Under the pieces are notes generated by a model, which did no database searches, was not told where the DNA came from, and worked only from the letters and a program-made list of their open reading frames with translations. Below are positions 6,599 to 50,660 of a stretch of DNA of 64,000 bases, piece after piece. Each line of letters opens with the position of its first letter. The stretch's first letter is position 1. The DNA is from Phallusia mammillata (taxonomy: Eukaryota). The stretch is from assembly GCA_965637545.1 (NCBI GenBank), contig OZ281495.1, forward strand, positions 4,154,001-4,218,000, in the 5' to 3' direction. Position numbers and translations under genes: made by a program.

Positions 6599-8420
6599 AT
6601 GTCGACCGTCAGCAAATTTTGGTTCTTCACGAGTGTACTTGTATTCCTTCCCCTTCCTTGCAACAGTGAAGAGAAATATAGTGATTACTACTGTTTTTTT
6701 GTGTACTGTTTTAAACCTTGTCTTTTCGTCTTTTTTTAATATTGCTTACATAAAAACTCTATTTTATTGTTTTTATTATTCCATTATCAGATATTAGCCT
6801 TTCGACTCATATGTGCGGTAACATTACCTTGCCCATCAACACTTCACAGTTTGCAGTTAACCAAACAGAAATTACTGAAACCCAGAAGGAAGTAAGCAAA
6901 ACCGGAATTTTTTTTTCACGGTATGTACCAACCAAGCTGTTGCAAACGTTATAGTATTATTGGATAATAGGTATAAATCACATTGACTACAGTTGTGGTA
7001 AATTTAGGATGTGCCATTATAATTCAAAAATGCCCTTGCTTGGACATGTTTTAACAGTTTAGTGTGAAATGTTTGATACCTTTGAATAAAACTTTACAAC
7101 TGTAAGTAAAAGTGTGAGTTAATAAGAGTTTTTAGTCTATTCTCGGTATGTTTTTTATGTCAAGATGTATAGTATTTTGTGCATTATCTGGAATTTTTCT
7201 TTTTAGTCACTCTGTGTTAAAAATTTTGGACTATTGTTTTTGTGCCAAACTTGCCTCAGACAAAACTTAGCCAAGCATAGCCATAGAATAAATGGAAGGT
7301 AGTGCTTCCTTTTCAAATAGTTTGACGATTGTATGTGTAGCATGGATCATGTTGTAAAGTGGTGTTTTTTCTGGAAACATACAAATGTATAAACTCACTT
7401 TAGTTTGAAAGTATGACATCACATCTAAAGCTAAGTCTTAGGAAATCATTAGTTTTATTCTGGTGATGGTGTAAGCACATGTTGTACAATTGGTGTTCAA
7501 TAACTGGAAGTCAGCATAATTTTGGGTTTAAATCCCAGCAATGACCATTTTTCCCATCAAACGGATCATTTTAAAACAATGCCTGAACTAGGCAAAATTT
7601 AACCACTTTGCACAGTATGCCTATGTTGGTGTGTGGATCGTTGTGTTTTACCGCAACAAATCCACCAGGCATTAAACCATGTTAAAACTGTTAATGTTGT
7701 TGGTTCTACTTAAAGCTATTTTTACAACCAACAGGCCCAAACAACGAGATCGTTTACAAGTTTGTGCGGCCGAGAAAACTGGTAGAAAACAATTTGAAAC
7801 AAGCCGACCTAATAGCGATGGAGGGGGAGAAGTACGTTTGGTTGTCATAGTTACTAACTTCAGTGGTTCAGGCAAGTATTTTTTGGATTAGGAATGTGCA
7901 AGACTGGAGTTGTGTCTTAGCACCAGGGTTGGAAGTCAGGGCCATGGGTATAAATAGAGTCAGGGCCATGGGTATAAATAGAGACAATTTGTATTTGCTT
8001 CCGTGCCATTTTGCTTATATTTGTACTGTTAGTCGAAATTCTATTTTTCATGCCCTTAGTCGAAATGACAGCTTAAAGGAGACATATATTTTTTTTAAAG
8101 AATTTGACTATTTAAAGCTATTCTACAACTCTACTTTGCATGGTAGTAGTATGCATAAACAAATTGCAAACCAGTGCTAATCTAAATTCATTTTACTAAA
8201 ACAAACTTTTATTCAGCAATGCATTATGACCCAATGAAGCACATGGTTCGTTTTGGTTGAATATCAAGTCTGTTGTAAACTAAACTTTTTGGTGTGAAAT
8301 GATTATTTTTGCTTAATAACCGTGTAATGACTGTTATTTGTAATAGGACGTGTAAAACTGACCCTTACTACAACCACCGCTGTGATATTTGTTTTCATTG
8401 CTGTGTTGCAATTGTGGTGA
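6599..8420 (+). CDS. Gene A: small cell-surface glycoprotein with signal peptide, one unrecognised two-Cys domain and a C-terminal hydrophobic segment
   Basis: Exons 6599-6680 (MSTVSKFWFFTSVLVFLPLPCNSEEKY), 6791-6920 (NISLSTHMCGNITLPINTSQFAVNQT...GIFFS), 7735-7871 (RPKQRDRLQVCAAEKTGRKQFETSR...NFSGS; GC donor gcaagt), 8347-8420 (GRVKLTLTTTTAVIFVFIAVLQLW*). Phases 1/2/1 are consistent; several N-x-S/T sequons; clear similarity to gene B at 45806. Confidence 0.65.
7934..7981 (+). repeat. Perfect 2 x 24-bp intronic tandem duplication
   Basis: agtcagggccatgggtataaatag twice. Confidence 0.9.
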
Positions 8421-9951
8421 AACCGGGATAAATTTTGGGTGAGTATTTCATACTGTTAAAAACTTTAAACTTGATTAGTTGCACTAAAACTGATCTGCCT
8501 TACCCAAACACTAAAACATTATAACAAGCATTTTATTTCAATTTTTCTACAATAATTCTCAAAGTTCTTACCCTATGCATTAAAATTCAAATAAATGGTT
8601 CTTGCATTGTGATGTTCTGTTTTTAGCATACCGCAAGCTTAGTAACAGAAAGCTTAGGCAATTTTGTTTGTATTACAGACTTGACTGAAAATTTAAAATC
8701 GCAGAAGAATTGAAGCAAGTTAACAGTTTGGCTAATGATATGCATTCTTATTACAACATGTTTATGCAGTTTTTCTTAAACTTTTTACTGTTTTTAACTT
8801 TACCTTTAACTTCATCCAGTAAAATTCTTCATATACAGTGCCAAATATTGCTATTTTTCAATTCTACCTTTCTAAGCCGAGAACACTAAATTATGCATCT
8901 CTTTTTTTGTGCTTGTTGCAATTACCTTTTAATATGCACTAGATTACACCTAAATTATCATAAATATATATTTTTTTGCCTACTAATCCCATAATTTCTG
9001 TGAGATTCATGTGTTTGCAATTATACCTAACATTTTTTTCTTCTGTAAACTGGTTTGAAATATAATTCTAACTAACATATGCCGGCCAACTGATATTTTG
9101 TTTGTTTTAATGCTACAAATGTATTTGGCAGTAAGACTAACAGTAATAAACATTTTTAGGCAAATGGCTCTACTTATTGATGATTGTTTTGAAACTTTTT
9201 GTGTAGATTTTTTTTCTTCTTTTTGTTTAAAGCAGTGGGTGCAATGTTAACATAGTGGGCCTGGGTATATATAGGTATTTTTCAATGTATTTTCTATCAA
9301 ACCACATTGCATGGAATAAATCTTAATATTAAAATGTTCATTATCCTGATAAAGTGTTTCTGCCAGCTAATTTGGGCCACAATGTTGTACTTTTATGTGT
9401 TAAAATGCTAGTCATTATATAATGCAGTCCTAACTTCCAGTCAGTCTTTGTAGTAACTAATATTCATATTTGTGTCTTGTGTTACTCTTGTGCTGTTTAA
9501 CTTAGATGTCTTTGTTGGTAAAAATACTATTACCATGTTTTGTTGGGCCAACCCGAACACTTGCAATGTTTCTTTCACTGTTGTATGCGCTTATCGTCGT
9601 TTCACATGAAGCTATCTAAACCATATCAAGGTTGGTTGATACGTCTTTCACTGTCCTGTACTCGCACTTTACATATGCTTAGGTTATTTTATTGCATTTT
9701 AGTCCAAATATATACTCTCCATTCACAATAAATTATTGAAACCTCTCTTAAAATAGCGTTTTTGTTATTTGGAATATCTTGGGAATTTTAGAGATTCACT
9801 GTATCGAAATCTTTTTTAGGTTTTTAGACAAGTTTGCTAGAAACAATTAAATGTAGCTTCTTCACACCACTCTACCAGGGTCTGACTTTAACATATATTG
9901 GTGATGATAAATTCCATACCAGAGCTAAAACATGACGGACAAAATACGCAA

Positions 9952-10779
9952 TGTAACGTCCCGTGAACGCGCCCCGGTTATAGCGCGGAACATCACACGA
10001 GGAGAGAATTGAAACGCGATTCCTAATAGCCTCCAACAACCAGTCCACACAGATAGATGTTTAGCTGATCTTATTAGGCGAATTCTTTGAATGTAGGACG
10101 ATGAAAACGAATTGGAAACGTATAGGAAACGGTTTCTGCATAAAGCATGACATTAACACACTGCGCTTTAAATGCAGAAATATAGCACAAATCTTACCAA
10201 CTGTTGTGGTAACCGGAGAGAGTAAATAGCACGGGTATTCAACTCGCATCAATTACTGGTACACACCTAAACATACAATAACATATGTCACCACACTGCG
10301 CCTTTATGACGTCACACACAGTTCTTACCAAGCTATGTTTGGCGACAGTACAGAATAAGTCACGCTTCACGTGAAGATAAAACAGAAATACTGCGTAAAC
10401 AAAATGCAACTTAAGCATCTTGTCTAAACCCAACTACACGTACAGTACAACTATTACAAAGCGAATGACATATTAAGTCATTGCGGTTAAGTTCACATTC
10501 ATTACCATAATTCACATTTTAGAGTCATTAAACACATATGTACAAAGTGACTCACCAATAATCGTCAACACGACAATAAATAGCCTTTTCTAATTCAACC
10601 GACGCAGCACCGTGCTCCACGGAAGTCAGCAACGAAAAGAACTAAACCACGTTGCGTTATCACACAAAACTGGCAGTCCATTGTTACGTCACACAACGCA
10701 ATAGATTACAACACAAGTTGTACTGAGGAAATGCGGGAATCTATAGAAATCTGCAATTACTGGCAAATAAGATGTAACA
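9952..10779 (-). repeat. 3' LTR of the BEL/Pao element
   Basis: tgtaacgtcc...gatgtaaca, 828 bp; no difference from 17015-17842 seen by eye, and the ORF track gives identical peptides for both copies. Confidence 0.95.
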
Positions 10780-10790
10780 TACCCCCCCAC
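10780..10790 (-). other. Polypurine tract
   Basis: Minus strand GTGGGGGGGTA immediately before the 3' LTR start TGTTAC. Confidence 0.85.
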
Positions 10791-10872
10791 AATGTACGAA
10801 TCCAAGGAGTACATTTACAACACAACACACAAACATCGGCAGTAATTGCGAACACAAAAAATAAACAACTAA

Positions 10873-13800
10873 TCACGCATCGCGGCATAGCAAGCACAAT
10901 TTTGCAATTGGGCGTCTGAGTGCTCCAGTGTGAGTCTTGACGATCACCTGACGCACTACTCCCTTCCGATCAGGAAGCACATCGGTCACGCGTCCCAGAA
11001 GCCATTTGCTCCTAGGCTGATTATCATCCGCTACAAGCACAATGTCGCCGACCGTGAAATTAGAATGTCCATTTGCCCACTTCGATCTGGGCATTAGCGT
11101 CGGCAGGTACTCGCGCGACCATCGCCGCCAAAATTGGTCGGCCAAGTATTGTACTTGGCGCCAACGGTTACGATGGAAACAGTCCTTCCCCGTAAACAGT
11201 CCAGGGGGCATATTCGGCGCTGCACGTTGCAGCAGTAGGTGATTTGGTGTAAGGGGCTCCTCATCCTTCGAATCGAACGTCACCGGAACCAAGGGACGAG
11301 AGTTCAGGATGGCCTCGACCTCCACCATCAGCGTCATCAGTTTCTCATCGGACAATGTCTGCTCCGAAAGCAGAGCGTTGAGAATTTTGCGCACAGAGCG
11401 TATCATTCGCTCCCAAACCCCACCCATGTGGCTGGCAGTGGGAGGATTGAAGCTCCACGCAATATCACGTTGTTGCAGATATTTGTAGATCTGCTTTTGA
11501 TTCCACCTGTTCAGCTCTTCGCGCAGGATGCGCTCAGCTCCAACGAAGTTTGTGCCGTTGTCGCTGTAGATCTGGTCTGGCCGTCCTCGACGACCGATAA
11601 AACGTCGGAGAGCTCCAATAAAGGAGTCCGTAGACAGTGAATGCGCAATCTCAATGTGCGCGGCCCTGGTGGAAAAACAAGTAAAGATGCACCCGTACCT
11701 CTTTACCTCACTTCGTCCTTGCTTCACAAGGAAAGGTCCAAAGTAGTCGACACCGACCACCGAGAACGGCGGCTTATTGGCCTGCAGTCTCGCAGCAGGA
11801 AGGTCTGCCATCATCTGTTTGCCCAGGGGGCCATTTCTTCGGCGACAGGAAACACACTGTCCAAGAACACGCCGAACTGCTACCCCTCCTTTGATGATCC
11901 AGTAGCGTTGCCTGAGAGACGACCACGTGTGTCCCATTCCAGAATGGCCAACCTCGTCATGCTGTTGCATAATCACCAGGTCGGTAAACCGATGGTCGTA
12001 TGGAAGAATCATAGGATGTTTAACATCGAACTCGACACACGCACGCTCGATCCTTCCACCAACTCTCATAACTCCATCGACTAGAATTGGGTTGAGCTTT
12101 CCAAGAGCCCTCTTTTTCTTTGGTAAACGAACGTCTTCTCCTTTGGCCTTTGACATCGCAGCGATAACGTCCGGGAAACTTCGTCTCTGTACATACTTTA
12201 CAATCTCAAGCTCGGCAGCCTTGAGTTCAACAACGGTCAGTTGCCCAGTAGGTACTTTATACTTGGCAGGAAACCTCCTTGACATCAACATCGATTTGAA
12301 TCTGAGCAACCAGCTTACAGCCCTTTTCAGCCGATTGAGTGATGAGTATCTCGCAATGAGTCGATCCGTAGCGGACTCGCTGGTGACCAGACAAACGGTT
12401 TGAGTTTCTTTCTTTATCAAAAGAAATTCGATTGGCAATGACGACAAGTCTGGGCATGAAGGCCATGTATCTTCTTGTTCCCAAAGAAACTGGGGTCCAG
12501 TAAGCCATCGGCTGGACCTAAGGAATTTATTCACACTGAGTCCACGAGACGCCTCGTCCGCTGGATTTACCTTGGTGCTGACGTGTCTCCATTGACTAGG
12601 CCGGGAAACATCCTCGATTTTGGCCAAGCGATTTGCAACGAACACTGGGAAGCGCTTATTGCAGTTGCGAATACTTTGAAGAACCGCAGTCGAATCCGTC
12701 CAGAACACGGATTGGCATTCGTCCAGTTGCAGCTCCTTTCTCACAAGTCGATCCAACTTGGCTGCAACAACGGCCGCCGTCAGCTCCAGGCGGGGAATCG
12801 AACATGTCTTCAGGGGGGCAACGCGTGCCTTGCCTATTAAAAACGAGCAGTGAATGCGTCCTTGCTCGTCTACCAGCCTCAGATAGGTCACCGCGCCGTA
12901 AGCTGTGGATGACGCATCTGCAAAATGGTGCAATTCCGTTTTTCGCACCTTACCAAAATCGTGGGGCTTCACGCATCTAGGCAGAACGACGCCTCCTAAC
13001 CGCGGTAGTTGCTGCAACCATTTTGCCCACGATTCGGAGTCTTCATCGGAAAGAACGTCATCCCATCCCAGCTGCTTTCTGCAGAGATCTCTTTGCATCG
13101 TCTTGGCCACCACGATCACGGGCGCTGCAAAGCCAAGAGGATCGTATAAGGAACTTACCACCGACAGGATTGACCTTCTGGTGTAGGCTGTAGGCTGCTT
13201 TACATCGACATTGAAACCGAACTCGTCCGACGAAACGTTCCATCGAACACCAAGTACCCTCTCGCAGGAGGAACCATCCACGTCCAGCTCCTTCACCGAT
13301 TTAGCCCGTTCCTCTTCATCAATAGACGCGAGAACTCGCTCGCTGTTGCTAAGCCACTTGGTTAGCCGAAATCCCTTCTTCTTGAGAAGTGCACAGATAC
13401 CTTTGACCAACTGAACTGCTTCTGCTTCAGTCGACACGGATTTTAAACAGTCGTCAACGTAGAAATTCTTTTCTACCGTCTCGACGACTTCCTTTGGAAA
13501 TTCGCTTCGCAAATCATCAGCGGCTTGTTTAAGACAAAAACTCGCACAGGAAGGGGAAGAAGTTGCTCCAAACAAATGAACAAGCATCCTGTGTGCGGTG
13601 GGCTTCTTCGACACATCGCCATCGGGCCACCACAAGAACCGAAGTGCATCACAATCTGTCAGCTTCACACGGATCTGATGAAACATGGCCTCCACGTCGG
13701 CCACAAGAGCTACCCTTTCCATCCGAAACCTTGATAGAACTCCTACTAAGGAATTGGTCAGATCCGGACCCTGGAGTAAAGCATCATTCAACGACTGGTC

Positions 13801-16779
13801 GCGGTATTTGGCAGCACAGTCAAAAACTACCCGCACCTTTCCGGGCTTGTGTGGATTTGTGACAGGGTGATGCGGCAGGTACCATACTACCTCTGCAGAC
13901 TGTTCCTCATTTGGAACTTCTTCGGCATAGCCTTTAGCTATGTAACCCTGTACCGTCTTTGTATACGCATCACGTAGCACGGCGTCGCGTCTCAGGCGAC
14001 GTTCTAAAGAACCCAAACGGTTTAGCGCCATGTCCTGGTTGCACCGAAGCGGTTGTGCGTTCGGGCGCCATGGCAACGGCAACTCATAATGACCTTGCTT
14101 GAATTGCACACTAGTTTTCATTTTATCCAATACGTAACGGTCTTCACGCGACATAGGCATCGCGTCGGCGTTGGTATCTTGAAAGTCGGTCTTCCACATT
14201 CGCTCTAACTTCTCGTGCAGCGAATCATTGGCAACTTGAGTAAAGTTGACGGAAAACAAATCAGTTGACTTGTTAGAGACAGGTCCTGCCAATGCCCATC
14301 CAAGTGGAACCCTGAATGCAATAGGTTGCTTCGATTTTCCCTTCCGTACCTCTTGCACGAGAAAGGCCTCTGGAACGTCTAGCCCGATGAGCAACAAAGC
14401 TTCACTGCAATCTACCTGTGGGAATGACAGGTCTCTAATATGTGGCAGTGCATCCAATTCCGCGTTTCTCGGAAACTTGTTGGCGGTGATAGGCAAACAA
14501 TCAACAGCGAAAACCTCAGGAAGTTCCACTGTTGTAGAGCCATCGAGCGAAGCAACAGATAAATTCACTCTTTCGCCCTCGCGCTTGCGACTGTTCCCGT
14601 TGATCGTTTTAAGCGTCACGTTGCTAGGTTCACCTTGCAGCCCAAGCTTATCTGTCAGTTTCTTGTCGCACAAGGTAATGCCCGAGCCAGTATCTAAAAG
14701 AGCGTAAGTATCAACAGTCCTACCGTTAGCACTGACTTTGACCGCAACCATCATCAAGTTGACGCTCTGTCTACCGGAGGAAGCATGACAGTTCTTTCCA
14801 ATCGCCGACACAACCGAACAAACTGTCCGTTCCGGCGCAGGTCCTTTGACAGGAGACTCGCCCTCTCTCTTCTCTGGCGGATGCAATAAGGTGTGATGGG
14901 CTTCATTGCAGTCCCTGACGGTACACGCTTTGGGGCTGTTGCACTTAGTGGCAAAGTGCCCAAATCTGAAACAATTATCACAGAGTCTACGGCGCCGGGT
15001 GACGCGCAGACGATCGCGGTAAGGTAGGGATTTAAATTCCTCGCACTTAGCAAGCACGTGGTTTCCCGAACAGCACTGGCACAACGGGGTAGTGGGAAAA
15101 TGGGAAGGTCCGGCACGAACCTTCGGCCTAGATTCTTGTTCGCTTACAACGACATGACTGGAAGCCTTTACATGACTACTTTTACCTTTCGCCTTCTTAG
15201 CTTCGTTGCGATGCTCATCGAGCATGCGGCTGAACAGTGAATTTGCAATCCGATCCTCCGTTTCCACAAAGTCCACAAGATGCTCAAACAAAGGTTCACG
15301 GCCAGTATCTCTGAGAATTTTCTCAACACGCCGTTTCCAAGCCTCTTGCATCTTGAACGGTAGACGATTCACAACAGCAATCAACGTGGGGTAATTATTC
15401 ATCTCGGAATGCTCGTCAATGTCTGAAAGTGTAAGTAAACAATCGCGCAGCGACTGCGCAAGCTCGCTCAAACCAGCAGCATCGTTCGGTCGCAATTCTG
15501 GACCGTTGACCACACACCTTACACATGCATGAGCGATTATGTGTGACTTGCCAAAGTGGTCGTACAGTAACTGTCTCGCTTGTTGGTACCCGTTTACCTT
15601 TAGTCTAAAGCAGTGTTCAATCAGTTTACGGGCCTTGCCATCACAATGCTGCGCCAAATACGACAATTTGGCACCATCGTCGTCGACCTTGTCGTCGATA
15701 CGAGAATCGAAATTGCGCACAAACTTCCAATAGTCCATTGGATTGCCATCAAAAACGAGAACCTTAGGCTTCGGTCTGTTTATGTGCTTTACAAGTGATG
15801 CAATCTCATTGTCATGCACGCCAGTTGGCTTGACTGAATCGTATGTACAAATATTATTTACAATTGGGTTTGCTGCGGTAAAGGAACCTCTTTCGTCAAA
15901 CGAAGATTTAATTTTAGGCGCATATTGGGATGGGGACTTCGAAGGAGCAACATAGTCAACCACATACCGCTGGTCAGGAGGGCTTCGCTGCGACGTGACA
16001 GGCGGTGACGTGAACAATACGCGACGTTGATCCCCGAGCGGCTCCTCCGGGGGAGGCGTGGTCGATTTACCAGAACCTTCCTTCACCGTCACGTACTCCG
16101 TGTTTCCTGACATCTCGTCCCAAACTTTCTCTTCAACCTCTGCGGCTTGGAGCTGGTGCTGCAGTTCCAGCATTTCCATTTTGTCCCTTTGACGCTGTTC
16201 TTCTTCAGCACGACGAATTTCTTCTTCGGCGCGACGTCTGTCTTCTTCTGCGCGTCGCATGTTCTCTTCTGCGCGTAGTATATCGGTTTGCCGTTTCATT
16301 ACTTCGTGCTGTCTGGCTAGCTCCTGCTTCTGCGCTGTCTGTTGAATAGCAAGACGCGCAAGCTGCGTAGTAACTTTAACTCTAGTTCTACTGTTAGTGG
16401 AAGAACTAGATCGCCTACTTCGTCCGCAGAAGGAGTCGTTGTCCCTTGGACTCTTATCACCACTTCCACCCGGACTAGCTATGTTAACAGGTAAAGCAAT
16501 GCTAGATGGAGAATTTACCTCACGAATCCAGTGAGAAACTCGGTCATCAAATTCGGCCTTGTTTTTCCTCACGCTAGCTAGTTCGGCGGCAAGATCGGGA
16601 TGCGCCTCGTAGACAGCAACAGCATCCACAAAAAGGTGTTCAAGCGCAACCAAGATCGTCTCGAGCACCTGTTTGTTGCGGTGGTCCTTCATCAGACACT
16701 CGGCGGCTAGATATTGATCATCTAGACGTCGACGACAGTCAGCGATCGCTTCAGGAGTTGTAACGTTTGATTGGCTCAT
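10873..16779 (-). CDS. BEL/Pao gag-pol polyprotein, 1968 aa, uninterrupted
   Basis: Coiled-coil N-terminus; gag core (FDGNPMDYWKF); Cys/His knuckles (CDNCFRFGHFATKC, CTVRDCNEAHHTLLH); aspartic protease LLDTGS; RT YVDD; RNase H FADAS; integrase HDEVGH...CVSC, VGVDYFGP, IYSDNGTNF. Confidence 0.97.
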   Translation of the reverse strand: MSQSNVTTPEAIADCRRRLDDQYLAAECLMKDHRNKQVLETILVALEHLFVDAVAVYEAHPDLAAELASVRKNKAEFDDRVSHWIREVNSPSSIALPVNIASPGGSGDKSPRDNDSFCGRSRRSSSSTNSRTRVKVTTQLARLAIQQTAQKQELARQHEVMKRQTDILRAEENMRRAEEDRRRAEEEIRRAEEEQRQRDKMEMLELQHQLQAAEVEEKVWDEMSGNTEYVTVKEGSGKSTTPPPEEPLGDQRRVLFTSPPVTSQRSPPDQRYVVDYVAPSKSPSQYAPKIKSSFDERGSFTAANPIVNNICTYDSVKPTGVHDNEIASLVKHINRPKPKVLVFDGNPMDYWKFVRNFDSRIDDKVDDDGAKLSYLAQHCDGKARKLIEHCFRLKVNGYQQARQLLYDHFGKSHIIAHACVRCVVNGPELRPNDAAGLSELAQSLRDCLLTLSDIDEHSEMNNYPTLIAVVNRLPFKMQEAWKRRVEKILRDTGREPLFEHLVDFVETEDRIANSLFSRMLDEHRNEAKKAKGKSSHVKASSHVVVSEQESRPKVRAGPSHFPTTPLCQCCSGNHVLAKCEEFKSLPYRDRLRVTRRRRLCDNCFRFGHFATKCNSPKACTVRDCNEAHHTLLHPPEKREGESPVKGPAPERTVCSVVSAIGKNCHASSGRQSVNLMMVAVKVSANGRTVDTYALLDTGSGITLCDKKLTDKLGLQGEPSNVTLKTINGNSRKREGERVNLSVASLDGSTTVELPEVFAVDCLPITANKFPRNAELDALPHIRDLSFPQVDCSEALLLIGLDVPEAFLVQEVRKGKSKQPIAFRVPLGWALAGPVSNKSTDLFSVNFTQVANDSLHEKLERMWKTDFQDTNADAMPMSREDRYVLDKMKTSVQFKQGHYELPLPWRPNAQPLRCNQDMALNRLGSLERRLRRDAVLRDAYTKTVQGYIAKGYAEEVPNEEQSAEVVWYLPHHPVTNPHKPGKVRVVFDCAAKYRDQSLNDALLQGPDLTNSLVGVLSRFRMERVALVADVEAMFHQIRVKLTDCDALRFLWWPDGDVSKKPTAHRMLVHLFGATSSPSCASFCLKQAADDLRSEFPKEVVETVEKNFYVDDCLKSVSTEAEAVQLVKGICALLKKKGFRLTKWLSNSERVLASIDEEERAKSVKELDVDGSSCERVLGVRWNVSSDEFGFNVDVKQPTAYTRRSILSVVSSLYDPLGFAAPVIVVAKTMQRDLCRKQLGWDDVLSDEDSESWAKWLQQLPRLGGVVLPRCVKPHDFGKVRKTELHHFADASSTAYGAVTYLRLVDEQGRIHCSFLIGKARVAPLKTCSIPRLELTAAVVAAKLDRLVRKELQLDECQSVFWTDSTAVLQSIRNCNKRFPVFVANRLAKIEDVSRPSQWRHVSTKVNPADEASRGLSVNKFLRSSRWLTGPQFLWEQEDTWPSCPDLSSLPIEFLLIKKETQTVCLVTSESATDRLIARYSSLNRLKRAVSWLLRFKSMLMSRRFPAKYKVPTGQLTVVELKAAELEIVKYVQRRSFPDVIAAMSKAKGEDVRLPKKKRALGKLNPILVDGVMRVGGRIERACVEFDVKHPMILPYDHRFTDLVIMQQHDEVGHSGMGHTWSSLRQRYWIIKGGVAVRRVLGQCVSCRRRNGPLGKQMMADLPAARLQANKPPFSVVGVDYFGPFLVKQGRSEVKRYGCIFTCFSTRAAHIEIAHSLSTDSFIGALRRFIGRRGRPDQIYSDNGTNFVGAERILREELNRWNQKQIYKYLQQRDIAWSFNPPTASHMGGVWERMIRSVRKILNALLSEQTLSDEKLMTLMVEVEAILNSRPLVPVTFDSKDEEPLTPNHLLLQRAAPNMPPGLFTGKDCFHRNRWRQVQYLADQFWRRWSREYLPTLMPRSKWANGHSNFTVGDIVLVADDNQPRSKWLLGRVTDVLPDRKGVVRQVIVKTHTGALRRPIAKLCLLCRDA

Positions 16780-16828: not shown

Positions 16829-17014
16829 CAGTTGAAGCTTATTTCAAGAAGCAGTTGAAACTTGATTTCAACTGTATTGTTCTGTTCAACGAACAGTTGA
16901 AACTTGATTTCAACTGCAGAGTTGTGTTCAACAACAGTTGAAACTTTCTTGCAGGAAGCAGTTGAAACTTGATTTCAACTGCAGATTGTCTTCAACAGCC
17001 AGTTGAAACTTTCA
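16829..17014 (-). repeat. Array of palindromic repeats in the retrotransposon 5' leader
   Basis: cagttgaaa-cttga-tttcaactg (9-bp stem, 5-nt loop) at 16852-16874, 16894-16916 and 16959-16981; half copies at 16829, 16935 and 17000. Confidence 0.9.
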
Positions 17015-17842
17015 TGTAACGTCCCGTGAACGCGCCCCGGTTATAGCGCGGAACATCACACGAGGAGAGAATTGAAACGCGATTCCTAATAGCCTCCAAC
17101 AACCAGTCCACACAGATAGATGTTTAGCTGATCTTATTAGGCGAATTCTTTGAATGTAGGACGATGAAAACGAATTGGAAACGTATAGGAAACGGTTTCT
17201 GCATAAAGCATGACATTAACACACTGCGCTTTAAATGCAGAAATATAGCACAAATCTTACCAACTGTTGTGGTAACCGGAGAGAGTAAATAGCACGGGTA
17301 TTCAACTCGCATCAATTACTGGTACACACCTAAACATACAATAACATATGTCACCACACTGCGCCTTTATGACGTCACACACAGTTCTTACCAAGCTATG
17401 TTTGGCGACAGTACAGAATAAGTCACGCTTCACGTGAAGATAAAACAGAAATACTGCGTAAACAAAATGCAACTTAAGCATCTTGTCTAAACCCAACTAC
17501 ACGTACAGTACAACTATTACAAAGCGAATGACATATTAAGTCATTGCGGTTAAGTTCACATTCATTACCATAATTCACATTTTAGAGTCATTAAACACAT
17601 ATGTACAAAGTGACTCACCAATAATCGTCAACACGACAATAAATAGCCTTTTCTAATTCAACCGACGCAGCACCGTGCTCCACGGAAGTCAGCAACGAAA
17701 AGAACTAAACCACGTTGCGTTATCACACAAAACTGGCAGTCCATTGTTACGTCACACAACGCAATAGATTACAACACAAGTTGTACTGAGGAAATGCGGG
17801 AATCTATAGAAATCTGCAATTACTGGCAAATAAGATGTAACA
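17015..17842 (-). repeat. 5' LTR of the BEL/Pao element
   Basis: 828-bp copy of 9952-10779, followed by TSD cgcaa. Confidence 0.95.
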
Positions 17843-18238: not shown

Positions 18239-18306
18239 AATTCATCCGACGAAACAGACAATTCGTCTACGGTCTCATTGAGCTCGAAGGCGGTCTCATT
18301 TATTAT

Positions 18307-18529
18307 GGTAGAGCTACTAACACTGAGTTTCACCTTTGGCTCGACCTGGGAACTTCTGGTAGGTGGCACAAAAGAGCATAGGCGTTTATGGTGCTGTTAC
18401 AGCAATTTGGGTTTATGGTAAGAATAATTGCCGAGTCAGCAGTACCATAAACGCCTATGTTCTTTTGCGCCACCTTCCAGAAGTTCCCAGGTCGAGCCAA
18501 AGGTGAAACTCAGTGTTAGTAGCTCTACC
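18307..18529. mobile_element. Foldback MITE (223 bp, about 90-bp TIRs, 9-bp TSD); MULE-like or Merlin-like
   Basis: ggtagagctactaacactgagtttcacctttggctcgacctgggaacttctgg... is mirrored at the right end (...ctcagtgttagtagctctacc) with few mismatches; TSD atttattat at 18298-18306 and 18530-18538. Confidence 0.85.
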
Positions 18530-38814: not shown

Positions 38815-41800
38815 ATGGGGGTAAATATGTTTGTTCATGTAAACTATCAAAAACAAAGATTATTCAAACGATTAAAAATCGGATTTAAATACAACTGATA
38901 TAAAGAAAAAATAGCAAAGATATTGACAGATGTGGTAAATTTATGTTGTACCCTTACCACACATCATGAAAAAGTCACTTGGTAACTGTTAAATTAGCTG
39001 CAAAACATGTTGGATTTTAATAAAAAATAAAACCACAAACAACACCTAAAATATGAGAATTCAACCCGCAACAGAATATAATTTCTTATTTGGTTACTAA
39101 ACTTTGACTCCCAACTTTATTGTGTAATAGGAAGTTCAAACATGCGAACCAGACAAGATCAGTTGTTATCTCGGTAAGAGCGGCTTGATTGGCTACGGCG
39201 GATTTTCCTCTGTCTGGCTCGGAAGAATGGACAACAAGGATGTTGCAGTAAAATGTATTAATGTAACGTCAGGACCCGAAGGAATTCTACATACCAAAAA
39301 ACGGTACGTTGCTTATTATAACTTAAAACAGTAACATGGTGTAAAAGATAGTGAACCAGGCCTAGCGAAGGCGTTAAAACGATTTGGCTGGTCACCAAGC
39401 ATTCCCACATATGGCGGGGCAATAGGCGAACCGATTTGTATATTAGTATGCCGTGATCGTTGGTCTTCGGGTACGCTTCAGGATTGATTCGAGTAATGAT
39501 TTTTTGATCATCGTATAAACGCAAAAACTATTGCATTATACAACCATACCACGCGTCACCGAATTTGGGCACGTCGCGCAAGTTAATACAAGTCGGTTAA
39601 ACATTGACTGGTGTTTAAACTGCCCGTTTAATTGATTTCAATTTTAGAGTTTTGAAAGAGTTCGAATTGCTTTGGAAGGCAGATCACGAAAACATCGTAA
39701 AAGCATTCAAACTGACGCAATGGGATAGAAACAACTGGATGGCCATAGTGACGGAATACTTGCCCTGCGGTGACCTTGAGAAGTTATTGTTTGACCCAAG
39801 CTACAGAAAAACGCGAATCAGCTTTCCTTTGCGTCTGCGATTGATTTATCACGTCACAAAAGGGGGGTATTTACACAATCTTCCTGAAGGCGGTCACGTG
39901 GTTCATGGTGACCTAAAGTGCAACAACATTTTGCTGACGGTCAATCTTACGTGCAAAATTGCAGACTTCGGCAGCGAGTTTTTGGTAAACAGTGATGACG
40001 AAGAAGGGCATAAAGGCACGCATGTTCCGTTTACAATAACTTATGCTGCTCCGGAGCTTCTCACTGAAAAGGTGCTTCCAAGCACATTGACTGACGTCTA
40101 CAGCGTAGGTTTAATAGTAGAGGCCGTACTGTTTCGTTCTTCTCCATTTTCACGTGTACTAGAAAGTCCACCCAGCACCAATCATGTCGAATGGTTAAAG
40201 GCGGCGGTGTTAAATGAAACACCATTTCCTAAAGAGCTATGCACACTGGTACACAACGAAGCAAACGTAATGGGATACACAGATTTAGTTGTTGAGATCG
40301 AAGCCGAGGCGAAAAAATGTCGGAATCAAATGCCGAATGACCGTCCACAGATTACACATGTCCGTGAAAAATTTTGCTCTTTACTGGAGAAATATTCCCC
40401 AAAGAGACAGGACATACAAGCGGTCAGTAAGATGCTGAAAGCTGGACCCAAATCTGCCCGAGATGAAACCGAGTTAGTTCCGCTATCTCGGTTTTGTCCC
40501 GCAAACATGGGTGTGTTTCCAAATCGACACATCGATATTCAGCAGTCAAAGATTACAAGAAGAGGAAAAAAAGCTGGGGGACGAAAGAAGCAATCGAAGA
40601 AACAAGTTAAAAAAGCGATATTACAAAGATTGTCATTGGGTACGTGACAAACCTTGAGCGTGCCATGCTAATATTTAAAACATGTCAAATATCGTTCGAA
40701 TATCCTTACTTCATTGGCTCACTTTATACGTCGAGTAAATAAATACAAGGCTATTTATTACAGAATATGACGAATGCTTATTGCCCTTTTTATGAGATTT
40801 TAATTACATTTTGCAAAATTCAGTGTGCGTTGATGATAATCTGGATCAAAAACAAAGTGCGACAGGAAAAGATTTGGAAGCTGCACCAAGAAAAAACAGA
40901 CAACGCGCAGCAGAAAAGAGTGACGCTTATACCCACGAAATTGAAATTCATACCAATAAATCTTCTACTTCCCCAAAATTACGAGCAGGTCAGTAATAAA
41001 ATTTCAACATTCGCACCAAATCACCCGGTAGTGCAGATTTGTCAGTTTAAAAATGCGATAGAAGTAAACTTGGTACCTTGTTCAAATCTTGCACGTAACG
41101 CGTTGATTTTGTTGTTTAAAAGTTTCATCCAAATTGCATTTACTTTACATTGCGTTCAAGTTGTCCTTAAATATTGGCCTGATCAAGTAAATAATTCCAA
41201 GCTTTTTTCGACAGAAAATGACGAACTTCCACTCAAAGAGTTGTTGCAATCTGACCGTCGCCCTGTTAAAGATCACAAAGAGGTTGTTTCACTTGATAAA
41301 CCCACTTTTGAAGGTAACACAATAATTCTGTGGTGATAATGTTGAGCAAAACTAAAGTGAGGCAACAGGAAGAAATTGACATCAACACTTTCTTCACTTT
41401 GCCATTGAGTTTTTCTTTAATGTTGACCCGATTAAATCGTCCAGCAAATAACTCTGGGATTGCTTTCTTCAGAGAATGTAAAGCGCTTCAGTGTGGAGGC
41501 ATCGCAGCCCGAACCTCACCCTGTTGAAAAAGACAAAGAAGTCATTCTGTGGGACCAACAAAGCCCTGAAGGTAAACATATTCTAAGCTTCTTTTCTATC
41601 ACTTTGACAAGTATTAATTTCACATATTTTTAAATTTTGCCTACCGCACTGACTCTTCAACTGATTTAGATAAGTGATAAAAATTCACCTGTGACACAAA
41701 AATGTTGGTTGATATAATTTAAACTAAAAAAAACATTAAAAAAATAACGAAAACCCGTACTTGGCCTCACAATTTGTTTTTAACGTTATTTATTCGATCT

Positions 41801-44787: not shown

Positions 44788-45805
44788 TATGCTTCTAAAC
44801 TAGTCCACAGTGCTCGAGGTGGCACATAGGCCTAAACATGCGCATGATAACTGGTATTCGAATTTCTATGTAAAAATATGTTACTCAAATTGGACCAGAA
44901 AATAAACAGCAAACAAACGCAAACGCAACTAAAATAGGAACGGGACTAAAAGTTTAAAACGATATTACACGCTGCTTTAAACTTTTCAGTCCACAAACGT
45001 TTAAAACAAAAGTATGCGCTATCCAAGTGCAATTGAAAGTCCCGTTAGGCTGTGTTCACTCATTCGGAACGCGTATGAACAATCACAAAATGGTACTTTG
45101 TGGCAAAAATCGTACATCCTGCGTGGTACTGATTACACATGAAAACTTCAGAAACGATTTAATGTTTAATATCGGCTCGGTTCGGTAATATCGTTAACTG
45201 TTGACAGCTGAAGATATGTTTGTTTTTGATATTCATATGAATCTGTGTGATTATGGTTCAAAATTGCAAGCCACGGTGATGACATTCCTCCGGTATGCAC
45301 TGGTTTGTGGTGAAGTTGTACCAGAACGAACATGACAGCATTCAACGAAACAGTCAACAAAAAACTGTTTCAGCAGATTTCCAGATGGAGATCTATATCA
45401 CTTGTCACCTGCACAGAGACATTTTTTACAACCGAAGTTCGACTACCTAAGGTATTACGCAACTCAATGCAACATTTCTTGAATAGTTTAGAAGGGCGGG
45501 TTCAAGCTGTCCTGCCCAACGTGCGTATACTGGCTGCGAAATGTCAACGATATTGCGTGTGTTGACTTAGTAATATTTTGATGAACTGTTTAGAACTGGG
45601 TTTAATGTGATATGGTGTTTTGCTGTGGTGTTTCATCACTAAGCAAACGTTGACTGTGCTATGTTGTAATTTGAGTTCATTAAAGTTAATCAAAGAATGT
45701 GGCCTGCAAGCCTAAAGAAGTTACTCAATATTGTATATTGAAGTCATACTAAATATTACATGCCCAGTTCTGTTGTAAAGTACTGGATGATTTTTTTTAC
45801 AGATT

Positions 45806-48800
45806 ATGGAGTTTTGGTTCATTATGTTGACACTGACACTTTTTTTCTGTGTCCTTACTTGTTTTGTGGGAGTGACTGGTGACGCTAAAGAGACTTTTGG
45901 TAAGTCCTGTGCCATTGTATTAAACTCCACCACTTTTGAAAGTGTTACTTTGGTCATGATAAAAATATGCAGTGAGGTACATATTGTTTTCTGTTTTCAA
46001 ATTATAACTTTTTCACACAGGTATTAAGTTGGCACCAAACGAATGCAAGAATCTTAAACTGCTTCGTACCACCCGTATGTTGTCCATAAATGACTATACT
46101 ATTCGAAATGATGAACCGAAGCTGATTGAAGGAATTATCTTTGTTTTGTGGGTGAACTTCAAAAAATATATTATTGATTTAATTCAATTGATTAGATTTG
46201 TATTCTTGCAGCATTCTTAAATATATATATTGCTAATTAATACTATTCTTGAAAAGTAAAACACTATCTACTAAATCAGGCTTCCATATACATGGACAGA
46301 AAAACTTATACTTGATTTCAGTGATTGTTTGGTTAAGTGGTTAAACTATTTGTTATTATGCTGTCATTATTGTTTGCCTCAACTATATAGTCAAGTGGGG
46401 TAAAAAAAAACAATTTTTTGAAACTTTGTTGCCAAAGTTTTATTTTAGGCAACAAAAGGTCAATTTTTCTTCCCAATAAAGCTGATAGGACTACTTTTAT
46501 AGTAATGTGACAAGTTTTTGATTTTACTAAAAAACAAAAAAAATATTTGACAAAAACTGTTGTTCTTTTTTAACCCGAAAAAAGTACAAAAAAAAACAAT
46601 GTCGGGGTAAAAAAAAACATGTGGACATTAGGACCATTTAAAAAAAAATTTAGTGGCCGTTGGAACTTCAATTCAATTATATGAACTTAATCAACCATCT
46701 TAAAGTCAAACATAAGACAGAAATTTCATTAAAAACTCTGTTACAATCAATAAGCCAAAAAAAAACGAGCCACATAAAATTCTTTGTTTTCGAAATTTTA
46801 CAAACCAAACTTACAGCAGTTATTAAACTGTTTGTAAATTAATAAAACGCTTTCAAATTAGTGCTAAGACTTTCCATGGCTTTGTACCTTTATTGCACTG
46901 CATTTATTGCCTTTGATTTGGTCTTTTTTGTCATTTACCAGTCTTTTGTTGGTATGCAACTAGGTTTAAATAGAGCTCACCCACTTGCTGACTGGTCATG
47001 TAACCTAAAACCTTATTGAAATAAAGTTTAATTTTCTACCCCAAACTGCTTGAATTACCACATAATGATTTGATAACCTCTTTTTTTTACTTTGTAGCAT
47101 TTTTCTTTAGGCCTGGATCCCAATTTGTACTTTTAGCCATGCAGGTATACTTTTTGGTAAAAATTTCTGCAAAACTGGGGCCCCAAAGAAATTTTATACA
47201 ACTTTGGTTTAAGAACATGTTTTATAGGCTTTCTTTTTTATTTTCTAAACTTCCAGGTGACAAATAAAAATGTTTGGGCAAAAAAAATTTTTGGGGTGCA
47301 AAAAATACATAGTTTTTTATTACCCCATTCCTATAGAACCGTTTGGGGTAAAAACGAACAACAAGATATCTGAAAAAATTTAGAAGCTAGCCAAGTAGAG
47401 TCTTTTTTGTTTAATAGGTCATAGTTATGACACAACACAGAACAAAGGTCATTGACACCAAACTTGTAATAAAAAATCTGCAGGAAAGTTTCTAAAGGTT
47501 GTTGAAGACTTTTTAACATACGAATTTTACTACTGTTGTTTCAACCTGCAGAACATTGCCTACAAACAAAATCTGAGAATGGTTTATGGCTTATTTTAAT
47601 GGTAGAGAATAAATACATCCTATGAAAAAGAAACCATTTAAAAAAAAATTTTGGTTTAGCTGTGAGGATATTGTTTTTTTTTACCCCAACTTCAGCAAAA
47701 TTTTTTTTTACCCCATTTGACTATATATAAATTATGTAACAAGTGTATTTGTTTTACCTGTTTTCTTGTTGTCGTTTAGCACAAAAAGCAATAAAAATCT
47801 GCTGATTTGTGTTTCTGAACAAACTGGAAAAATGACATTTAACACAAGGAGAATTGATTTCAATGAGAGTAATAAAAAAAAGCCGGGACTTTTGAATGTC
47901 ACTGTTGATGATGGCCTTTTTTCAACCTCCGGCAAGTGTTTGAAAAAAATATAGGTCAAATATGTATATTACTTGCTTGTTCAAGTTGTATACCACTTTG
48001 TAAGGCCTGTACAGCGGGCCACCAGGCTCATTTGGTTTGTGTTTAATAGTGTGTTTTTGTGTGAAAGACGAAAACGGTATCGTTTGAAAGTCCTAATACA
48101 CTAAATCATTTTGGCAAAGCTCTAGCAATTATGAGTTTGCATGCGCTGTCTCTTTCTGCTGTAGTTGCACACTTAACCATTTATATATAATTGTGTTACA
48201 GATGCCAAACTTTTAGACCCTGAAAAGTGCACTATGTTTAACTATGGTAAATCTCTATCTGTATCTGTGTATATTTCAAACAAGATGTTTGCTTGTGATT
48301 GGAAGGCAGGTTCCACAATAACACATGAAGTTGACAATCTAAAGTTTGAATGGTGGGTGTCTTTTCTCTATACATGCATATATTGTGTGAATAAGTACTA
48401 ACAAATACTCAACAAAGAATGAGAAATGGTATAAAAATATACATGTTGTATTGCATTTCTGGTAGTGTCTTTGCTGTAACACTTCATGTTTTATTACTTT
48501 GAGTAGTTAATTTGTATATTAGTCAACATGGTAGTAAGCAAGACAGTGTAACGTTTATTGGCCTAATTGGCCTTTTTAGTCTAAAGTAACTATTTAAGCT
48601 ATTATATAACGCCAATTATTTTGAAGTATTATCTTACATTAATGTAGATTTTGTTATCAAGCTTATTCTACTATTGCTTGAGTTCATTGAATTGCTTACA
48701 GATTTTGTGCGAGAATTATAACTTTTAGTTAAAATTAAATCATTTTATGAAGATAAAACCTGTAAATAAACAAGACCTAGTTCCACTCCACCAAGTGATT

Positions 48801-50660
48801 TTAATAAAAATAACACACAAACAATTAGGACACACACAATGAGGGTTGTTTTTTTCCCACTTTGAATCTGACTTAGTCACAGCTTTTTCCAACTTACTTT
48901 TCTAATCATTGTGCTATGATTAGTTTTTTCAAGCGAAAAAATCAATTAGCAAAAACAAACATTAATATGATTGTAAAAAGTTTTTTTTTTCAATGCCTTG
49001 AAGTAAAGATGCCAAAAATGCTTGTGAAATTAAATCTATAATTGTTGTTTCAGTTTGAATCAGTCGGTGAAGTTGTGCCTGATGGAAAACTTTCATGGAA
49101 ACAAGCATTTCTTTTTATTTTCAAAGTTTAACGAAAGTGTCAAAACTGAAAAATTCCAAGTACACAGAAAAGGTTGGTTTGTTACATACAAAATATTGAA
49201 CATATAACATTATACTGATATGAAGGTTAAAGCGCACTTACTTTATCTTTTTTGTGAAAATAAAGCTTGACAGTTATATATCCAAATATTCTTCTTTGTT
49301 GTTTTTACATTAAAACCATTGCTGTACTGGTGTTATAAGGTGGGGGCGTGCAACATATGGCCTAATGGGTCATAGTCCAACCTGCAAGCTCTTTAGTGTT
49401 GCCCCCAGCAACACACTGATTGAGATGCAAAAATGCAAAACTTCTGAGTGTAGCAAAATTTTCCACTAGTTTTTGGTAAATCTCCTAAGTTGCTATACCA
49501 TACATAAAAAAATATACGCTAAATCAGCGTTTTCCAACCGGTGGATCATACAGCAGTTACAGCAAGTAGCCTATTTCACCAAATGTGATGTAACAATTCC
49601 CTTTATGTAGAAAACAATTGTTTTGTGCGAAAGCCAGTGTTGCGCTGAAACTCTGTATGTTGTAGAAAATAAAGTTATTCATTCATTTGAAAGAATTTTG
49701 AATCATTGTGCACATGAAAAAAAGTTATGTGGCCCTGGCTTGAGGTCCGGAATTGGTTATACGGCCCACCGACAAAAACTGTTGCACACCCCTGTTATAA
49801 GGCATCAAACATAGTTTCTGCCTCATTGATGCTATGCAAAAAATTGAGTTTGGTACATCTGTTTACCATGTTTGACAAGAGTAATGTTTAATAATTATTA
49901 CTGTTTAGGCCATGATTTGGGATGGGTCGCTGGGATTGTAATTGTTGTGGTCATTGCTGCTTCTGCTTTTGGCTGCATAGTATGGTGTAAGGTAAGCAAA
50001 GTAATGTGGGTTTGACCTTTGGCTGCTTCACAGGTTATAATTTCAGCACTGATCTCCAGTGTTTGCATGGTTTTTGTTTACAAATTTCAAACCCCTAAGT
50101 TTTAATCAATTGTACACCTGATACATACATTTTGATATACATAAGCACGGCCACACACCGAAACAATTTAAATTTAATACAGCATAATCTAAAGGAAAGG
50201 TTTGACCTTTCTTTTAAACTATAGGCATGTTATCTCAAGTAAAACACCCTGTTGCAAATAGTACCCTTTTCATTCGTCACTAGTGGTTTCTGTATCCAGT
50301 TTGGGCCACAGTGTTCTAAATTGAAAAGTCATGGATAAAACATAACTTTCGCATTGAGACCCAACAAATATGTGTTACACTTTCATGTAATATATATATG
50401 TTTACCATTACAATAAGTCATGGTTGCTCAACTAAGCAAAAACTGTTAATGTAAGATGGTCAGTTATCAGCAAAACAAAAATCACTGAGCTTCACTGAGG
50501 CTGATCGCTTAACCCTATTATACAAAGATTATTAAAAGCTGACTAGCTTGTTTATTTTTTAAAGAAAAGAAAAAACTCAAAAGAGTCAGCAAGAATGGAT
50601 GAAGTTTATACCATTTCACAAATGAAACATGCAGAGCAGGAACAAGCATTTAAAGTTTAA
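45806..50660 (+). CDS. Gene B: complete type I membrane protein with signal peptide, two tandem copies of an unrecognised about 90-aa two-Cys domain, TM and a 32-codon cytoplasmic exon
   Basis: Exons 45806-45899 (MEFWFIMLTLTLFFCVLTCFVGVTG), 46021-46147, 47780-47931 (GC donor), 48202-48352, 49054-49172, 49909-49991 (GWVAGIVIVVVIAASAFGCIVWCK), 50565-50660 (KRKNSKESARMDEVYTISQMKHAEQEQAFKV*). Phases 1,2,1,2,1,0 all fit. Confidence 0.75.
46388..47723. mobile_element. Non-autonomous TIR DNA transposon (about 1.34 kb) in a gene B intron; superfamily unclear
   Basis: tagtcaagtggggtaaaaaaaaa ... tttttttttaccccatttgacta, flanked by tata on both sides; subterminal ggggtaaaaa/tttttacccc repeats at about 46604, 47345 and 47680. 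Confidence 0.8.
49341..49794. mobile_element. hAT MITE (454 bp) in a gene B intron
   Basis: Ends tgggggcgtgcaac / gttgcacacccctg; 8-bp TSD ttataagg at 49333-49340 and 49795-49802. Confidence 0.8.

What the first reader, a model, noticed from the sequence alone, without database searches (positions are those of the whole stretch)
6599..50660. Family of cell-surface proteins built from an unrecognised about 90-aa two-Cys domain (genes A and B plus a relic)
Gene B (45806-50660) has two domain copies and gene A (6599-8420) has one. Each copy is encoded by a phase 1-2 plus phase 2-1 exon pair with one Cys per exon. First half: IKLAPNEC / ISLSTHMC / AKLLDPEKC. Second half: NLLICVSEQTGKMTFNTRR versus RLQVCAAEKTGRKQFETSR. 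Both signal peptides contain FWF. The spacing does not look like Ig, FN3, CUB or sushi to me. The ORF track shows only disconnected fragments, so automated annotation may miss or fragment these genes. Novelty is my inference from failing to recognise the domain.
Basis: partly seen in the sequence, partly recalled or inferred. Interest (0 to 1): 0.8.

Follow-up and report, generated by a model that had tools for sequence, protein, structure and literature searches.

The report
Orphan sea-squirt surface glycoprotein gene pair
Two neighbouring sea-squirt genes encode small sugar-coated cell-surface proteins that share a roughly 90-residue two-cysteine module matching no known protein family; one gene is expressed and already public as an uncharacterised protein, and neither fold nor function could be worked out.

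Summary
Partly confirmed, of modest interest. Gene B is real. Spliced transcript contigs in three public runs join every proposed exon, including a GC-AG intron. The spliced product is letter for letter the public Phallusia mammillata protein CAB3261986.1 / A0A6F9DHM3 (314 aa, "uncharacterized"), so annotation has not missed it.

Gene A gives an intact four-exon model: signal peptide, one module, GPI-type tail. Its module is truly homologous to gene B's first module (29.5% identity, z 13.6). The two share the intron position and the GC donor. A's expression could not be tested, and no public protein carries its exon.

Gene B's second module shares exon phases, size and a short C..E..G...F motif with the first, but shows no significant sequence or profile similarity. 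"Two copies" is therefore unproven. No relic was found in the window.

Pfam, PDB sequences, a word search of 5.8 billion proteins, an exhaustive profile search of 1.84 billion representatives and a metagenome scan found nothing but the gene's own cluster. AlphaFold2 without an alignment failed (pLDDT 34), so "new fold" versus "very diverged beta-sandwich" stays open.

Best reading: a lineage-restricted pair of membrane-tethered glycoproteins, one type I and one GPI-type, probably for surface recognition or adhesion. Function is untested.

The parts
6599..6665 (+). Gene A exon 1: start codon and hydrophobic leader (contains KFWFF); ends in phase 1, donor GTGAAG
   Evidence: Reading of the sequence and splice model.
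6791..6920 (+). Gene A exon 2 (130 nt, phase 1 to 2): first half of the module, holding the first Cys (ISLSTHMC) and four N-glycosylation sequons
   Evidence: Homologous to B exon 46021-46147, z 5.5, 1 of 2000 shuffles.
7735..7871 (+). Gene A exon 3 (137 nt, phase 2 to 1): second half of the module, holding the second Cys (RLQVCAAEKTG); GC donor G|GCAAGT
   Evidence: Homologous to B exon 47780-47931, z 7.7. The same GC donor is confirmed by RNA contigs in gene B.
8347..8420 (+). Gene A exon 4: small residues (SGSG at the junction), a polar spacer, a 13-residue hydrophobic end and the stop codon; a GPI-attachment-type tail
   Evidence: hydropathy. Expression and GPI attachment were not tested.
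45204..45451 (+). Gene B 5' exon. Its 3' end at 45451 is confirmed. Its start is inferred from 246 nt of contig overhang. It carries several upstream ATGs; the one at 45332 is in frame and is the start used in the public record.
   Evidence: Loose ends at 45801. Their last 30 nt match 45420-45449 uniquely. Sequence read. P0004 is identical to this model.
45803..45899 (+). Gene B exon with ATG 45806 and hydrophobic leader (EFWFI ... VGVTG|DAKE)
   Evidence: Joint 45899|46021 in runs X1, X2 and X5. Hydropathy.
46021..46147 (+). Gene B module D1, first half (127 nt, phase 1 to 2), holding the first Cys (IKLAPNEC)
   Evidence: Joints 45899|46021 and 46147|47780, GT..AG.
47780..47931 (+). Gene B module D1, second half (152 nt, phase 2 to 1), holding the second Cys (NLLICVSEQTG); GC donor
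   Evidence: Joint 47931|48202 read as GC..AG in three runs.
48202..48352 (+). Gene B module D2, first half (151 nt, phase 1 to 2), with two Cys. It holds 8 of the 16 residue differences between the two public variants.
   Evidence: Joints. Variant differences.
49054..49172 (+). Gene B module D2, second half (119 nt, phase 2 to 1); the boundary codon and KLCLMENFHG supply two more Cys
   Evidence: Joints 48352|49054 and 49172|49909.
49909..49991 (+). Gene B transmembrane exon (WVAGIVIVVVIAASAFGCIVW)
   Evidence: Joints. Hydropathy above 2.5 over residues 257-269 of P0004.
50565..50660 (+). Gene B cytoplasmic tail exon (32 aa, basic start, ends AFKV) and stop codon. The 3' UTR runs more than 330 nt further.
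   Evidence: Joint 49991|50565. The contig reaches past 50700.

Best explanation
These are two old paralogous genes of the ascidian Phallusia mammillata, encoding small N-glycosylated proteins tethered to the outside of the cell.

Gene B makes a single-pass type I membrane protein. It has a hydrophobic leader, two modules of about 90 residues each encoded by an exon pair flanked by phase-1 introns, a transmembrane helix and a 32-residue basic tail. The last 16 residues of the tail, ending AFKV, are invariant between the two public variants.

Gene A makes a 135-residue protein with a leader, one module with two Cys and five glycosylation sequons, and a GPI-attachment-type tail.

A's module and B's first module are one protein family (shown). 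That family has no detectable relative in any library searched (shown, within the limits of those libraries).

Inferred, not shown:
- The two Cys of the module form an intradomain disulfide in a beta-rich fold.
- The proteins act in surface recognition or adhesion on embryonic cells. B would be tied to cortical scaffolds through its conserved C-terminus, which has the hydrophobic-X-hydrophobic form of class II PDZ ligands. A would be a tail-less lipid-anchored partner or decoy.
- B-D2 is probably (about 55%) a much-diverged duplicate of the same module.
For: - Splicing of all gene B exons is seen in contigs of three runs from two studies.
- The gene B model is identical to public protein P0004 from P. 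mammillata.
- That protein set probably comes from an egg-to-larva transcriptome whose names are simply the best Ciona BLAST hits (PMC7237864).
- A versus D1: z 13.6, 29.5% identity over 88 residues, the same intron position and phase, and the same G|GCAAGT GC donor.
- Leader, transmembrane segment, GPI-like tail and glycosylation sequons are all present.
- There is no family hit. Pfam on halves, modules and whole proteins found nothing. PDB sequences gave nothing.
- There are no relatives. The exhaustive profile search of 1.84 billion representatives gave only P0001 plus two repeat-protein chance hits. Word searches of 5.8 billion proteins gave only the gene's own cluster. Metagenome contigs gave none.
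- The C..E..G...F motif occurs only in the three second-half exons, plus one chance site inside a retroelement.
Against: - The fold is unresolved. AlphaFold2 gave pLDDT 34 for both modules, and the ESM Atlas model has pLDDT 0.43.
- No functional data exist.
- Gene A's transcription is untested, and no public protein carries its exon 3.
- D2's kinship is not statistically supported.
- 'No relatives' is limited. The one exhaustive search used only a 50-position half-domain profile, and unannotated genomes of other ascidians are not in the protein libraries.
- The tail Tyr (DEVYTI) is absent from variant P0001, so tyrosine-based signalling is unlikely.
- The true start codon of B (45332 or 45806) is unsettled.
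Confidence: 0.7

Rival explanations
1. The module is a very diverged member of a known beta-sandwich superfamily, most plausibly Ig-like, and not a new domain. The genes would then be ordinary fast-evolving IgSF-type surface receptors.
For: - The module is about 90 residues, flanked by phase-1 introns, has two Cys, and shows strand-like alternating hydrophobic stretches.
- Protein-language-model neighbours of P0001 residues 1-126 include several V-set, Ig and I-set clusters at 0.81-0.83.
Against: - No Ig, FN3, CUB or sushi model hits even at E up to 10.
- The A and D1 modules contain no Trp.
- The first Cys lies only 8-9 residues into the module, and 34-39 residues follow the second Cys. This does not fit the usual B-strand to F-strand geometry (reading of the sequence plus general knowledge).
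- The language-model lead is below the tool's own noise level. It changes to PF12248 at 0.77 for D1 alone and to nothing for D2 alone.
Confidence: 0.3
2. Gene A is a silent or decaying duplicate, a pseudogene in the making. Only gene B is a working gene.
For: - No protein holding A's exon 3 exists in 1.84 billion representatives, although gene B's products from the same species are there.
- A recent BEL retroelement sits 1.5 kb downstream of the gene.
Against: - All four exons are open.
- All splice sites are usable, including the GC donor shared with B.
- At about 30% identity to B, an unconstrained copy should have accumulated stops and frameshifts.
- Absence from an embryonic transcriptome does not exclude adult expression.
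Confidence: 0.25
3. Gene B's second module is an unrelated domain that merely shares a two-exon, phase 1-2/2-1 layout. B would then be a two-different-domain protein, and the 'family domain' occurs once per gene.
For: - Smith-Waterman scores of D2 against A or D1 lie within the shuffle distribution.
- hhalign probability is 0.2%.
- D2 has four Cys instead of two.
Against: - The exon phases are identical and the sizes similar: 270 nt against 267 and 279 nt.
- A Cys lies 8-10 residues into each exon.
- The C..E..G...F and FNES.K motifs sit at matching places. The motif was defined after seeing D2, however.
Confidence: 0.4

Closest known systems
Small GPI-anchored single-module glycoproteins such as Thy-1/CD90 (comparison from general knowledge)
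   Same: Gene A has the same layout: leader, one disulfide-bearing module of about 90 residues with heavy N-glycosylation, and a C-terminal GPI-type signal.
   Different: There is no sequence or profile match to any Ig model. The Cys spacing and the lack of Trp do not fit. GPI attachment is untested.
Two-module type I IgSF adhesion receptors of the CD2 / JAM / nectin type (comparison from general knowledge)
   Same: Gene B has the same layout: leader, two extracellular modules flanked by phase-1 introns, one transmembrane helix and a short tail with a possible PDZ-type C-terminus.
   Different: Each module is split by a phase-2 intron. No Ig family hit was found. The two modules are not detectably alike. 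The fold is unknown.
Public records CAB3261986.1 / A0A6F9DHM3 and CAB3263553.1 / A0A6F9DKR3 (Phallusia mammillata)
   Same: The first is identical to the gene B product. The second is a 182-residue, 91%-identical variant lacking the N-terminal part.
   Different: The record names ('uncharacterized protein LOC100177807', 'catechol O-methyltransferase-like') are best-BLAST-hit labels. No methyltransferase family is detected. Gene A has no public counterpart.
Other taxonomically restricted surface or secreted gene families noted in this same genome by the scan (for example orphan Cys-rich arrays and orphan receptor pairs)
   Same: These too are lineage-restricted, fast-evolving, exon-modular extracellular proteins without named domains.
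   Different: The module is different. Here there are only two dispersed paralogues, flanking a kinase gene array, and not a tandem array.

Membership tests
Immunoglobulin superfamily (Pfam clan Ig: V-set, I-set, C2-set, Ig_2, Ig_3) | Significant match to an Ig-type profile HMM | tested here: not met
   hmmscan against Pfam-A at E up to 10 gave no Ig family. It was run on the six half-module exons, on D1 and D2, and on whole P0001 and P0004.
Immunoglobulin superfamily | Cys in strand B and strand F, with the conserved Trp of strand C 10-15 residues after the first Cys | tested here: not met
   The A and D1 modules contain no Trp. The first Cys is 8-9 residues from the module start, and 34-39 residues follow the second Cys (sequences). 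The criterion itself is from general knowledge.
Immunoglobulin superfamily | Two-sheet Greek-key beta-sandwich fold | tested here: inconclusive
   AlphaFold2 single-sequence models of D2 and D1 have mean pLDDT 33.9 and 33.8. The Atlas model has pLDDT 0.43. No fold search was justified.
FN3, CUB, Sushi/CCP | Match to the family HMM and the characteristic Cys pattern | tested here: not met
   No Pfam hit. Two Cys per module does not fit the four of CUB or sushi.
Catechol O-methyltransferase (the name carried by P0001) | SAM-dependent methyltransferase domain | tested here: not met
   No methyltransferase family in Pfam for P0001 or P0004. Names in the likely source data set are unfiltered best Ciona BLAST hits (PMC7237864).
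Methyltransf_FA (PF12248), a language-model lead for D1 | Match to PF12248 | tested here: not met
   The feature score of 0.77 is below the tool's noise level. There is no hmmscan hit at E up to 10.
GPI-anchored proteins (gene A) | N-terminal leader plus a C-terminal signal: small residues at the attachment site, a polar spacer and a hydrophobic end with no cytoplasmic tail | tested here: met
   The sequence ends with SGSG, a 10-residue spacer, a 13-residue hydrophobic stretch and the stop codon. A hydrophobic window covers residues 116-121 onward. Actual lipid anchoring is not testable here.
Type I single-pass membrane proteins (gene B) | Leader or signal-anchor, one transmembrane helix, basic residues after the helix | tested here: met
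   Hydrophobic windows at residues 41-53 and 257-269 of P0004, with KKRK after the second. Cleavage of the leader is not testable here.

The most novel reading that the evidence does not exclude
The A/D1 module is a new extracellular fold confined to phlebobranch ascidians, and gene B is an unusually polymorphic recognition receptor. Two public variants differ at 9% of residues, with half of the differences inside one 36-residue stretch of the D2 first exon. The gene could therefore be involved in self/non-self or gamete/embryo surface recognition.
Probability: 0.1. Interest if true: 0.6.

Novelty: new variant of a known kind. Interest (0 to 1): 0.27.

Why it matters
If the module proves to be a new fold, it adds a tunicate-specific building block for cell-surface proteins in the sister group of vertebrates. 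Gene B is expressed during the well-mapped embryogenesis of Phallusia, so its role could be tested directly. As it stands, it is one more lineage-restricted membrane glycoprotein family of unknown function. That is useful for annotation (gene A is unannotated, and the public names of gene B's products are misleading), but it would not surprise a specialist.

Tried and rejected
- **Non-canonical donor in B exon 2.** My first model ended the exon at 46150/46151 and needed a GG donor or broke the frame. RNA contigs show the real donor is GT at 46148.
- **Alternative end of A exon 3.** A GT donor at 7876 gives a Cys-rich, non-hydrophobic tail. I rejected it in favour of the GC donor shared with B.
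- **Receptor-kinase idea.** I considered that A and B might be ectodomain parts of the neighbouring kinases. The kinases resemble cytoplasmic MARK/NEK/RIPK-type Ser/Thr kinases only weakly. B's transcript ends with its own stop codon and UTR. No DNA similarity links the A or B surroundings to kinase units.
- **Reference-only alignment of A's two exons to D1 for structure prediction.** MAFFT misplaced the first half both times, so the alignment was not used.
- **Typing the spliced A protein into tools.** I left this out because it has no reference. Whole-module Pfam, PDB and structure tests were therefore run on its homologue D1 (P0004:73-165) and on A's two exons separately.
- **Fold searches with the two AlphaFold models.** Not run, because pLDDT 34 would give meaningless matches.
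- **The look-up of encoding contigs for P0001 and P0004.** Nothing on record.
- **Literature search for the accessions and the LOC name.** No paper found.
- **Rfam.** Nothing in the window.
Full report
**Setting.** The window is AT-rich (about 35% G+C) eukaryotic DNA with short introns. Earlier notes of this scan suggested the ascidian Phallusia mammillata. I confirmed this, because the spliced product of gene B is identical to a protein deposited for that species. Rfam finds no RNA family in the window.

**Gene B is real and is spliced essentially as proposed.** Contigs from three public runs in two studies were laid on 45700-50700. In each run one spliced contig joins the following exon ends:
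- 45899|46021
- 46147|47780
- 47931|48202
- 48352|49054
- 49172|49909
- 49991|50565

All exon pieces show no differences from the window, apart from one changed letter (49117 A>G) in run X2's contig. Each contig continues more than 330 nt beyond 50700. All introns are GT-AG except 47932-48201, which is GC-AG.

The contigs also carry 154-246 nt upstream of 45801. The last 30 of these nt match 45420-45449 uniquely. There is therefore a 5' exon ending at 45451, spliced to 45803. This exon holds several upstream ATGs. The one at 45332 is in frame.

Started at 45332, my model is letter for letter the 314-residue public protein P0004: CAB3261986.1 / A0A6F9DHM3, "uncharacterized protein LOC100177807". 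A second public entry, P0001 (182 aa, "catechol O-methyltransferase-like"), is a 91%-identical variant that begins at an internal Met.

These records probably stem from the egg-to-larva transcriptome of Sladitschek et al. 2020. That study kept the longest peptide per transcript and named models by their best Ciona BLAST hit (PMC7237864). This would explain both the upstream start and the two unrelated, uninformative names. No methyltransferase domain is present.

**Anatomy of gene B, in P0004 numbering**:
- a hydrophobic leader at residues 42-66 with a classical VTG|D cleavage context
- module D1 at 73-165, with two Cys
- module D2 at 166-255, with four Cys
- a transmembrane helix at about 257-283
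- a 32-residue tail starting KKRK and ending AFKV
- four N-glycosylation sequons in the ectodomain

**Gene A.** The only model that keeps the frame through canonical sites is 6599-6665, 6791-6920, 7735-7871 and 8347-8420. Its third exon ends in G|GCAAGT. This is the same GC donor, at the homologous place, that RNA contigs confirm in gene B.

The 135-residue product has a leader, one 89-residue module with two Cys and five N-glycosylation sequons, and a tail of small residues, a polar spacer and 13 hydrophobic residues before the stop. That is the shape of a GPI-attachment signal.

No protein carrying its exon 3 exists among 1.84 billion cluster representatives. It is therefore unannotated, and absent at least from the embryonic transcript set. 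Its intactness at about 30% identity to B argues that it has been under constraint.

**Is the shared domain more than chance?**
- A's module and B-D1 align almost without gaps at 29.5% identity over 88 residues. The Smith-Waterman score is 82, against 25 +/- 4 for shuffles (z 13.6, 0 of 500).
- Each exon half is significant on its own (z 5.5 and 7.7).
- The internal intron interrupts the homologous codon in phase 2 in both.

B-D2 is different:
- Against A or D1 its scores lie inside the shuffle distribution (p 0.06-0.5).
- Profile-profile comparison gives 0.2% probability.
- What it shares is the exon layout (phase 1-2 / 2-1; 270 nt against 267 and 279), a Cys 8-10 residues into each exon, and short motifs (C..E..G...F and FNES.K).
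- In the six-frame translation of the window, the first motif occurs only in the three second-half exons and once inside a retroelement. I defined that motif after seeing D2.
- I rate D2 a diverged duplicate at about 55%, unproven.

No relic and no further copy was detectable in the window. I searched with HMMs of the halves, phmmer with every piece of both genes, motif scans and a self-comparison of the DNA.

**Is the domain known?** Every test available was negative:
- Pfam-A finds nothing meaningful at E up to 10. This covers the six exon translations, D1, D2 and the whole proteins. The only lines are chance-level, for example PinA inhibitor at E 0.017 and below cut-off.
- PDB sequences give nothing, either by phmmer or by a profile of the second half.
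- The exhaustive profile search of 1.84 billion representatives with the aligned second-half exons found only P0001 and two repeat proteins that are chance matches.
- Word-indexed searches of 5.8 billion proteins with P0001, P0004 and the D1 region found only the gene's own cluster.
- A metagenome scan found none.
- Language-model neighbours gave an Ig V-set lead at 0.81-0.83 for P0001:1-126. For D1 alone this became PF12248 at 0.77, and for D2 alone nothing. All of these are below the tool's stated noise level.
- AlphaFold2 without an alignment failed for both modules, with mean pLDDT 33.9 and 33.8. The ESM Atlas model is equally poor.

The module is therefore unrecognised by every test I could run. 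Whether it is a new fold or a very diverged beta-sandwich cannot be decided here. Against a conventional Ig domain stand the absence of any Ig HMM signal, the lack of Trp in A and D1, and the positions of the two Cys within the module.

**Limits of "no relatives".** The one exhaustive search used a 50-position half-domain profile, which would only catch fairly close kin. The genomes of other ascidians are mostly unannotated and so are not in the protein libraries. I had no tool to search the rest of this genome.

**Variation.** P0001 and P0004 differ at 16 of 182 residues:
- 8 differences lie within residues 174-209, the D2 first exon
- none lie in 210-284
- 6 lie in 285-298
- none lie in the last 16 residues

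The Tyr of DEVYTI is Asn in P0001, so a tyrosine-based signal is unlikely. The invariant C-terminus ending AFKV has the hydrophobic-X-hydrophobic form of class II PDZ ligands; this is inference from general knowledge. I cannot tell whether P0001 is an allele or a paralogue outside the window. The window holds only one copy, and the three runs show only the window's form.

**Context.** A and B flank a tandem array of five divergent Ser/Thr kinase genes on the same strand. The kinases resemble cytoplasmic MARK, NEK and RIPK kinases only distantly. Gene B's transcript has its own stop codon and UTR. I found nothing linking the two gene kinds beyond proximity.

**Verdict.** This is a real pair of paralogous genes, apparently lineage-restricted, for membrane-tethered glycoproteins. 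One is a two-module type I protein expressed in embryos and already public as an uncharacterised protein. The other is a one-module GPI-type protein that is unannotated and of unknown expression. The most likely role is surface recognition or adhesion, and this is inference from architecture only. Novelty is that of an orphan domain whose fold is still unknown. Interest is modest.

Noticed in passing
It has two 829-bp LTRs that are 100% identical (9951-10779 and 17014-17842) and a 1968-codon open frame on the minus strand (10873-16779). It looks like a very recent insertion, 1.5 kb downstream of gene A.
   Followed up: partly
window 20450-21403, 24648-25499, 28591-29175, 39652-40647, 53724-54704 (+ strand): Tandem array of five diverged protein kinase genes (Pkinase E 1e-23 to 1e-35; 66-79% DNA identity between copies). 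They are only distantly like MARK/NEK/RIPK kinases. Genes A and B lie at either side of four of them.
   Followed up: partly
window 46384-47727 (intron 2 of gene B): This intron stretch is covered by many separate contigs of the RNA-type runs. The contigs have numerous differences and loose ends on both sides, as expected of a dispersed, transcribed repeat and not of gene B's own transcript.
   Followed up: no
window 45217-45335: The 5' exon of gene B has a 38-codon upstream ORF whose stop overlaps the in-frame ATG at 45332 (ATGA). The true start codon is therefore unsettled (45332, as in the public record, or 45806 with a strong context directly before the leader).
   Followed up: partly
window 56469-57782 (+): A 437-codon ORF with a weak, sub-threshold match to the tnp2 transposase family (PF02992, E 5e-5). 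It is probably a DNA transposon remnant.
   Followed up: no
P0001 / P0004 (public records): Two 91%-identical Phallusia entries carry unrelated names, 'catechol O-methyltransferase-like' and 'uncharacterized protein LOC100177807'. Both appear to be unfiltered best-BLAST labels and are misleading as annotation.
   Followed up: yes
window 18305-18531: A 227-bp stretch that matches its own reverse complement at 85%, that is a palindromic repeat, just past the retroelement's 3' LTR.
   Followed up: no
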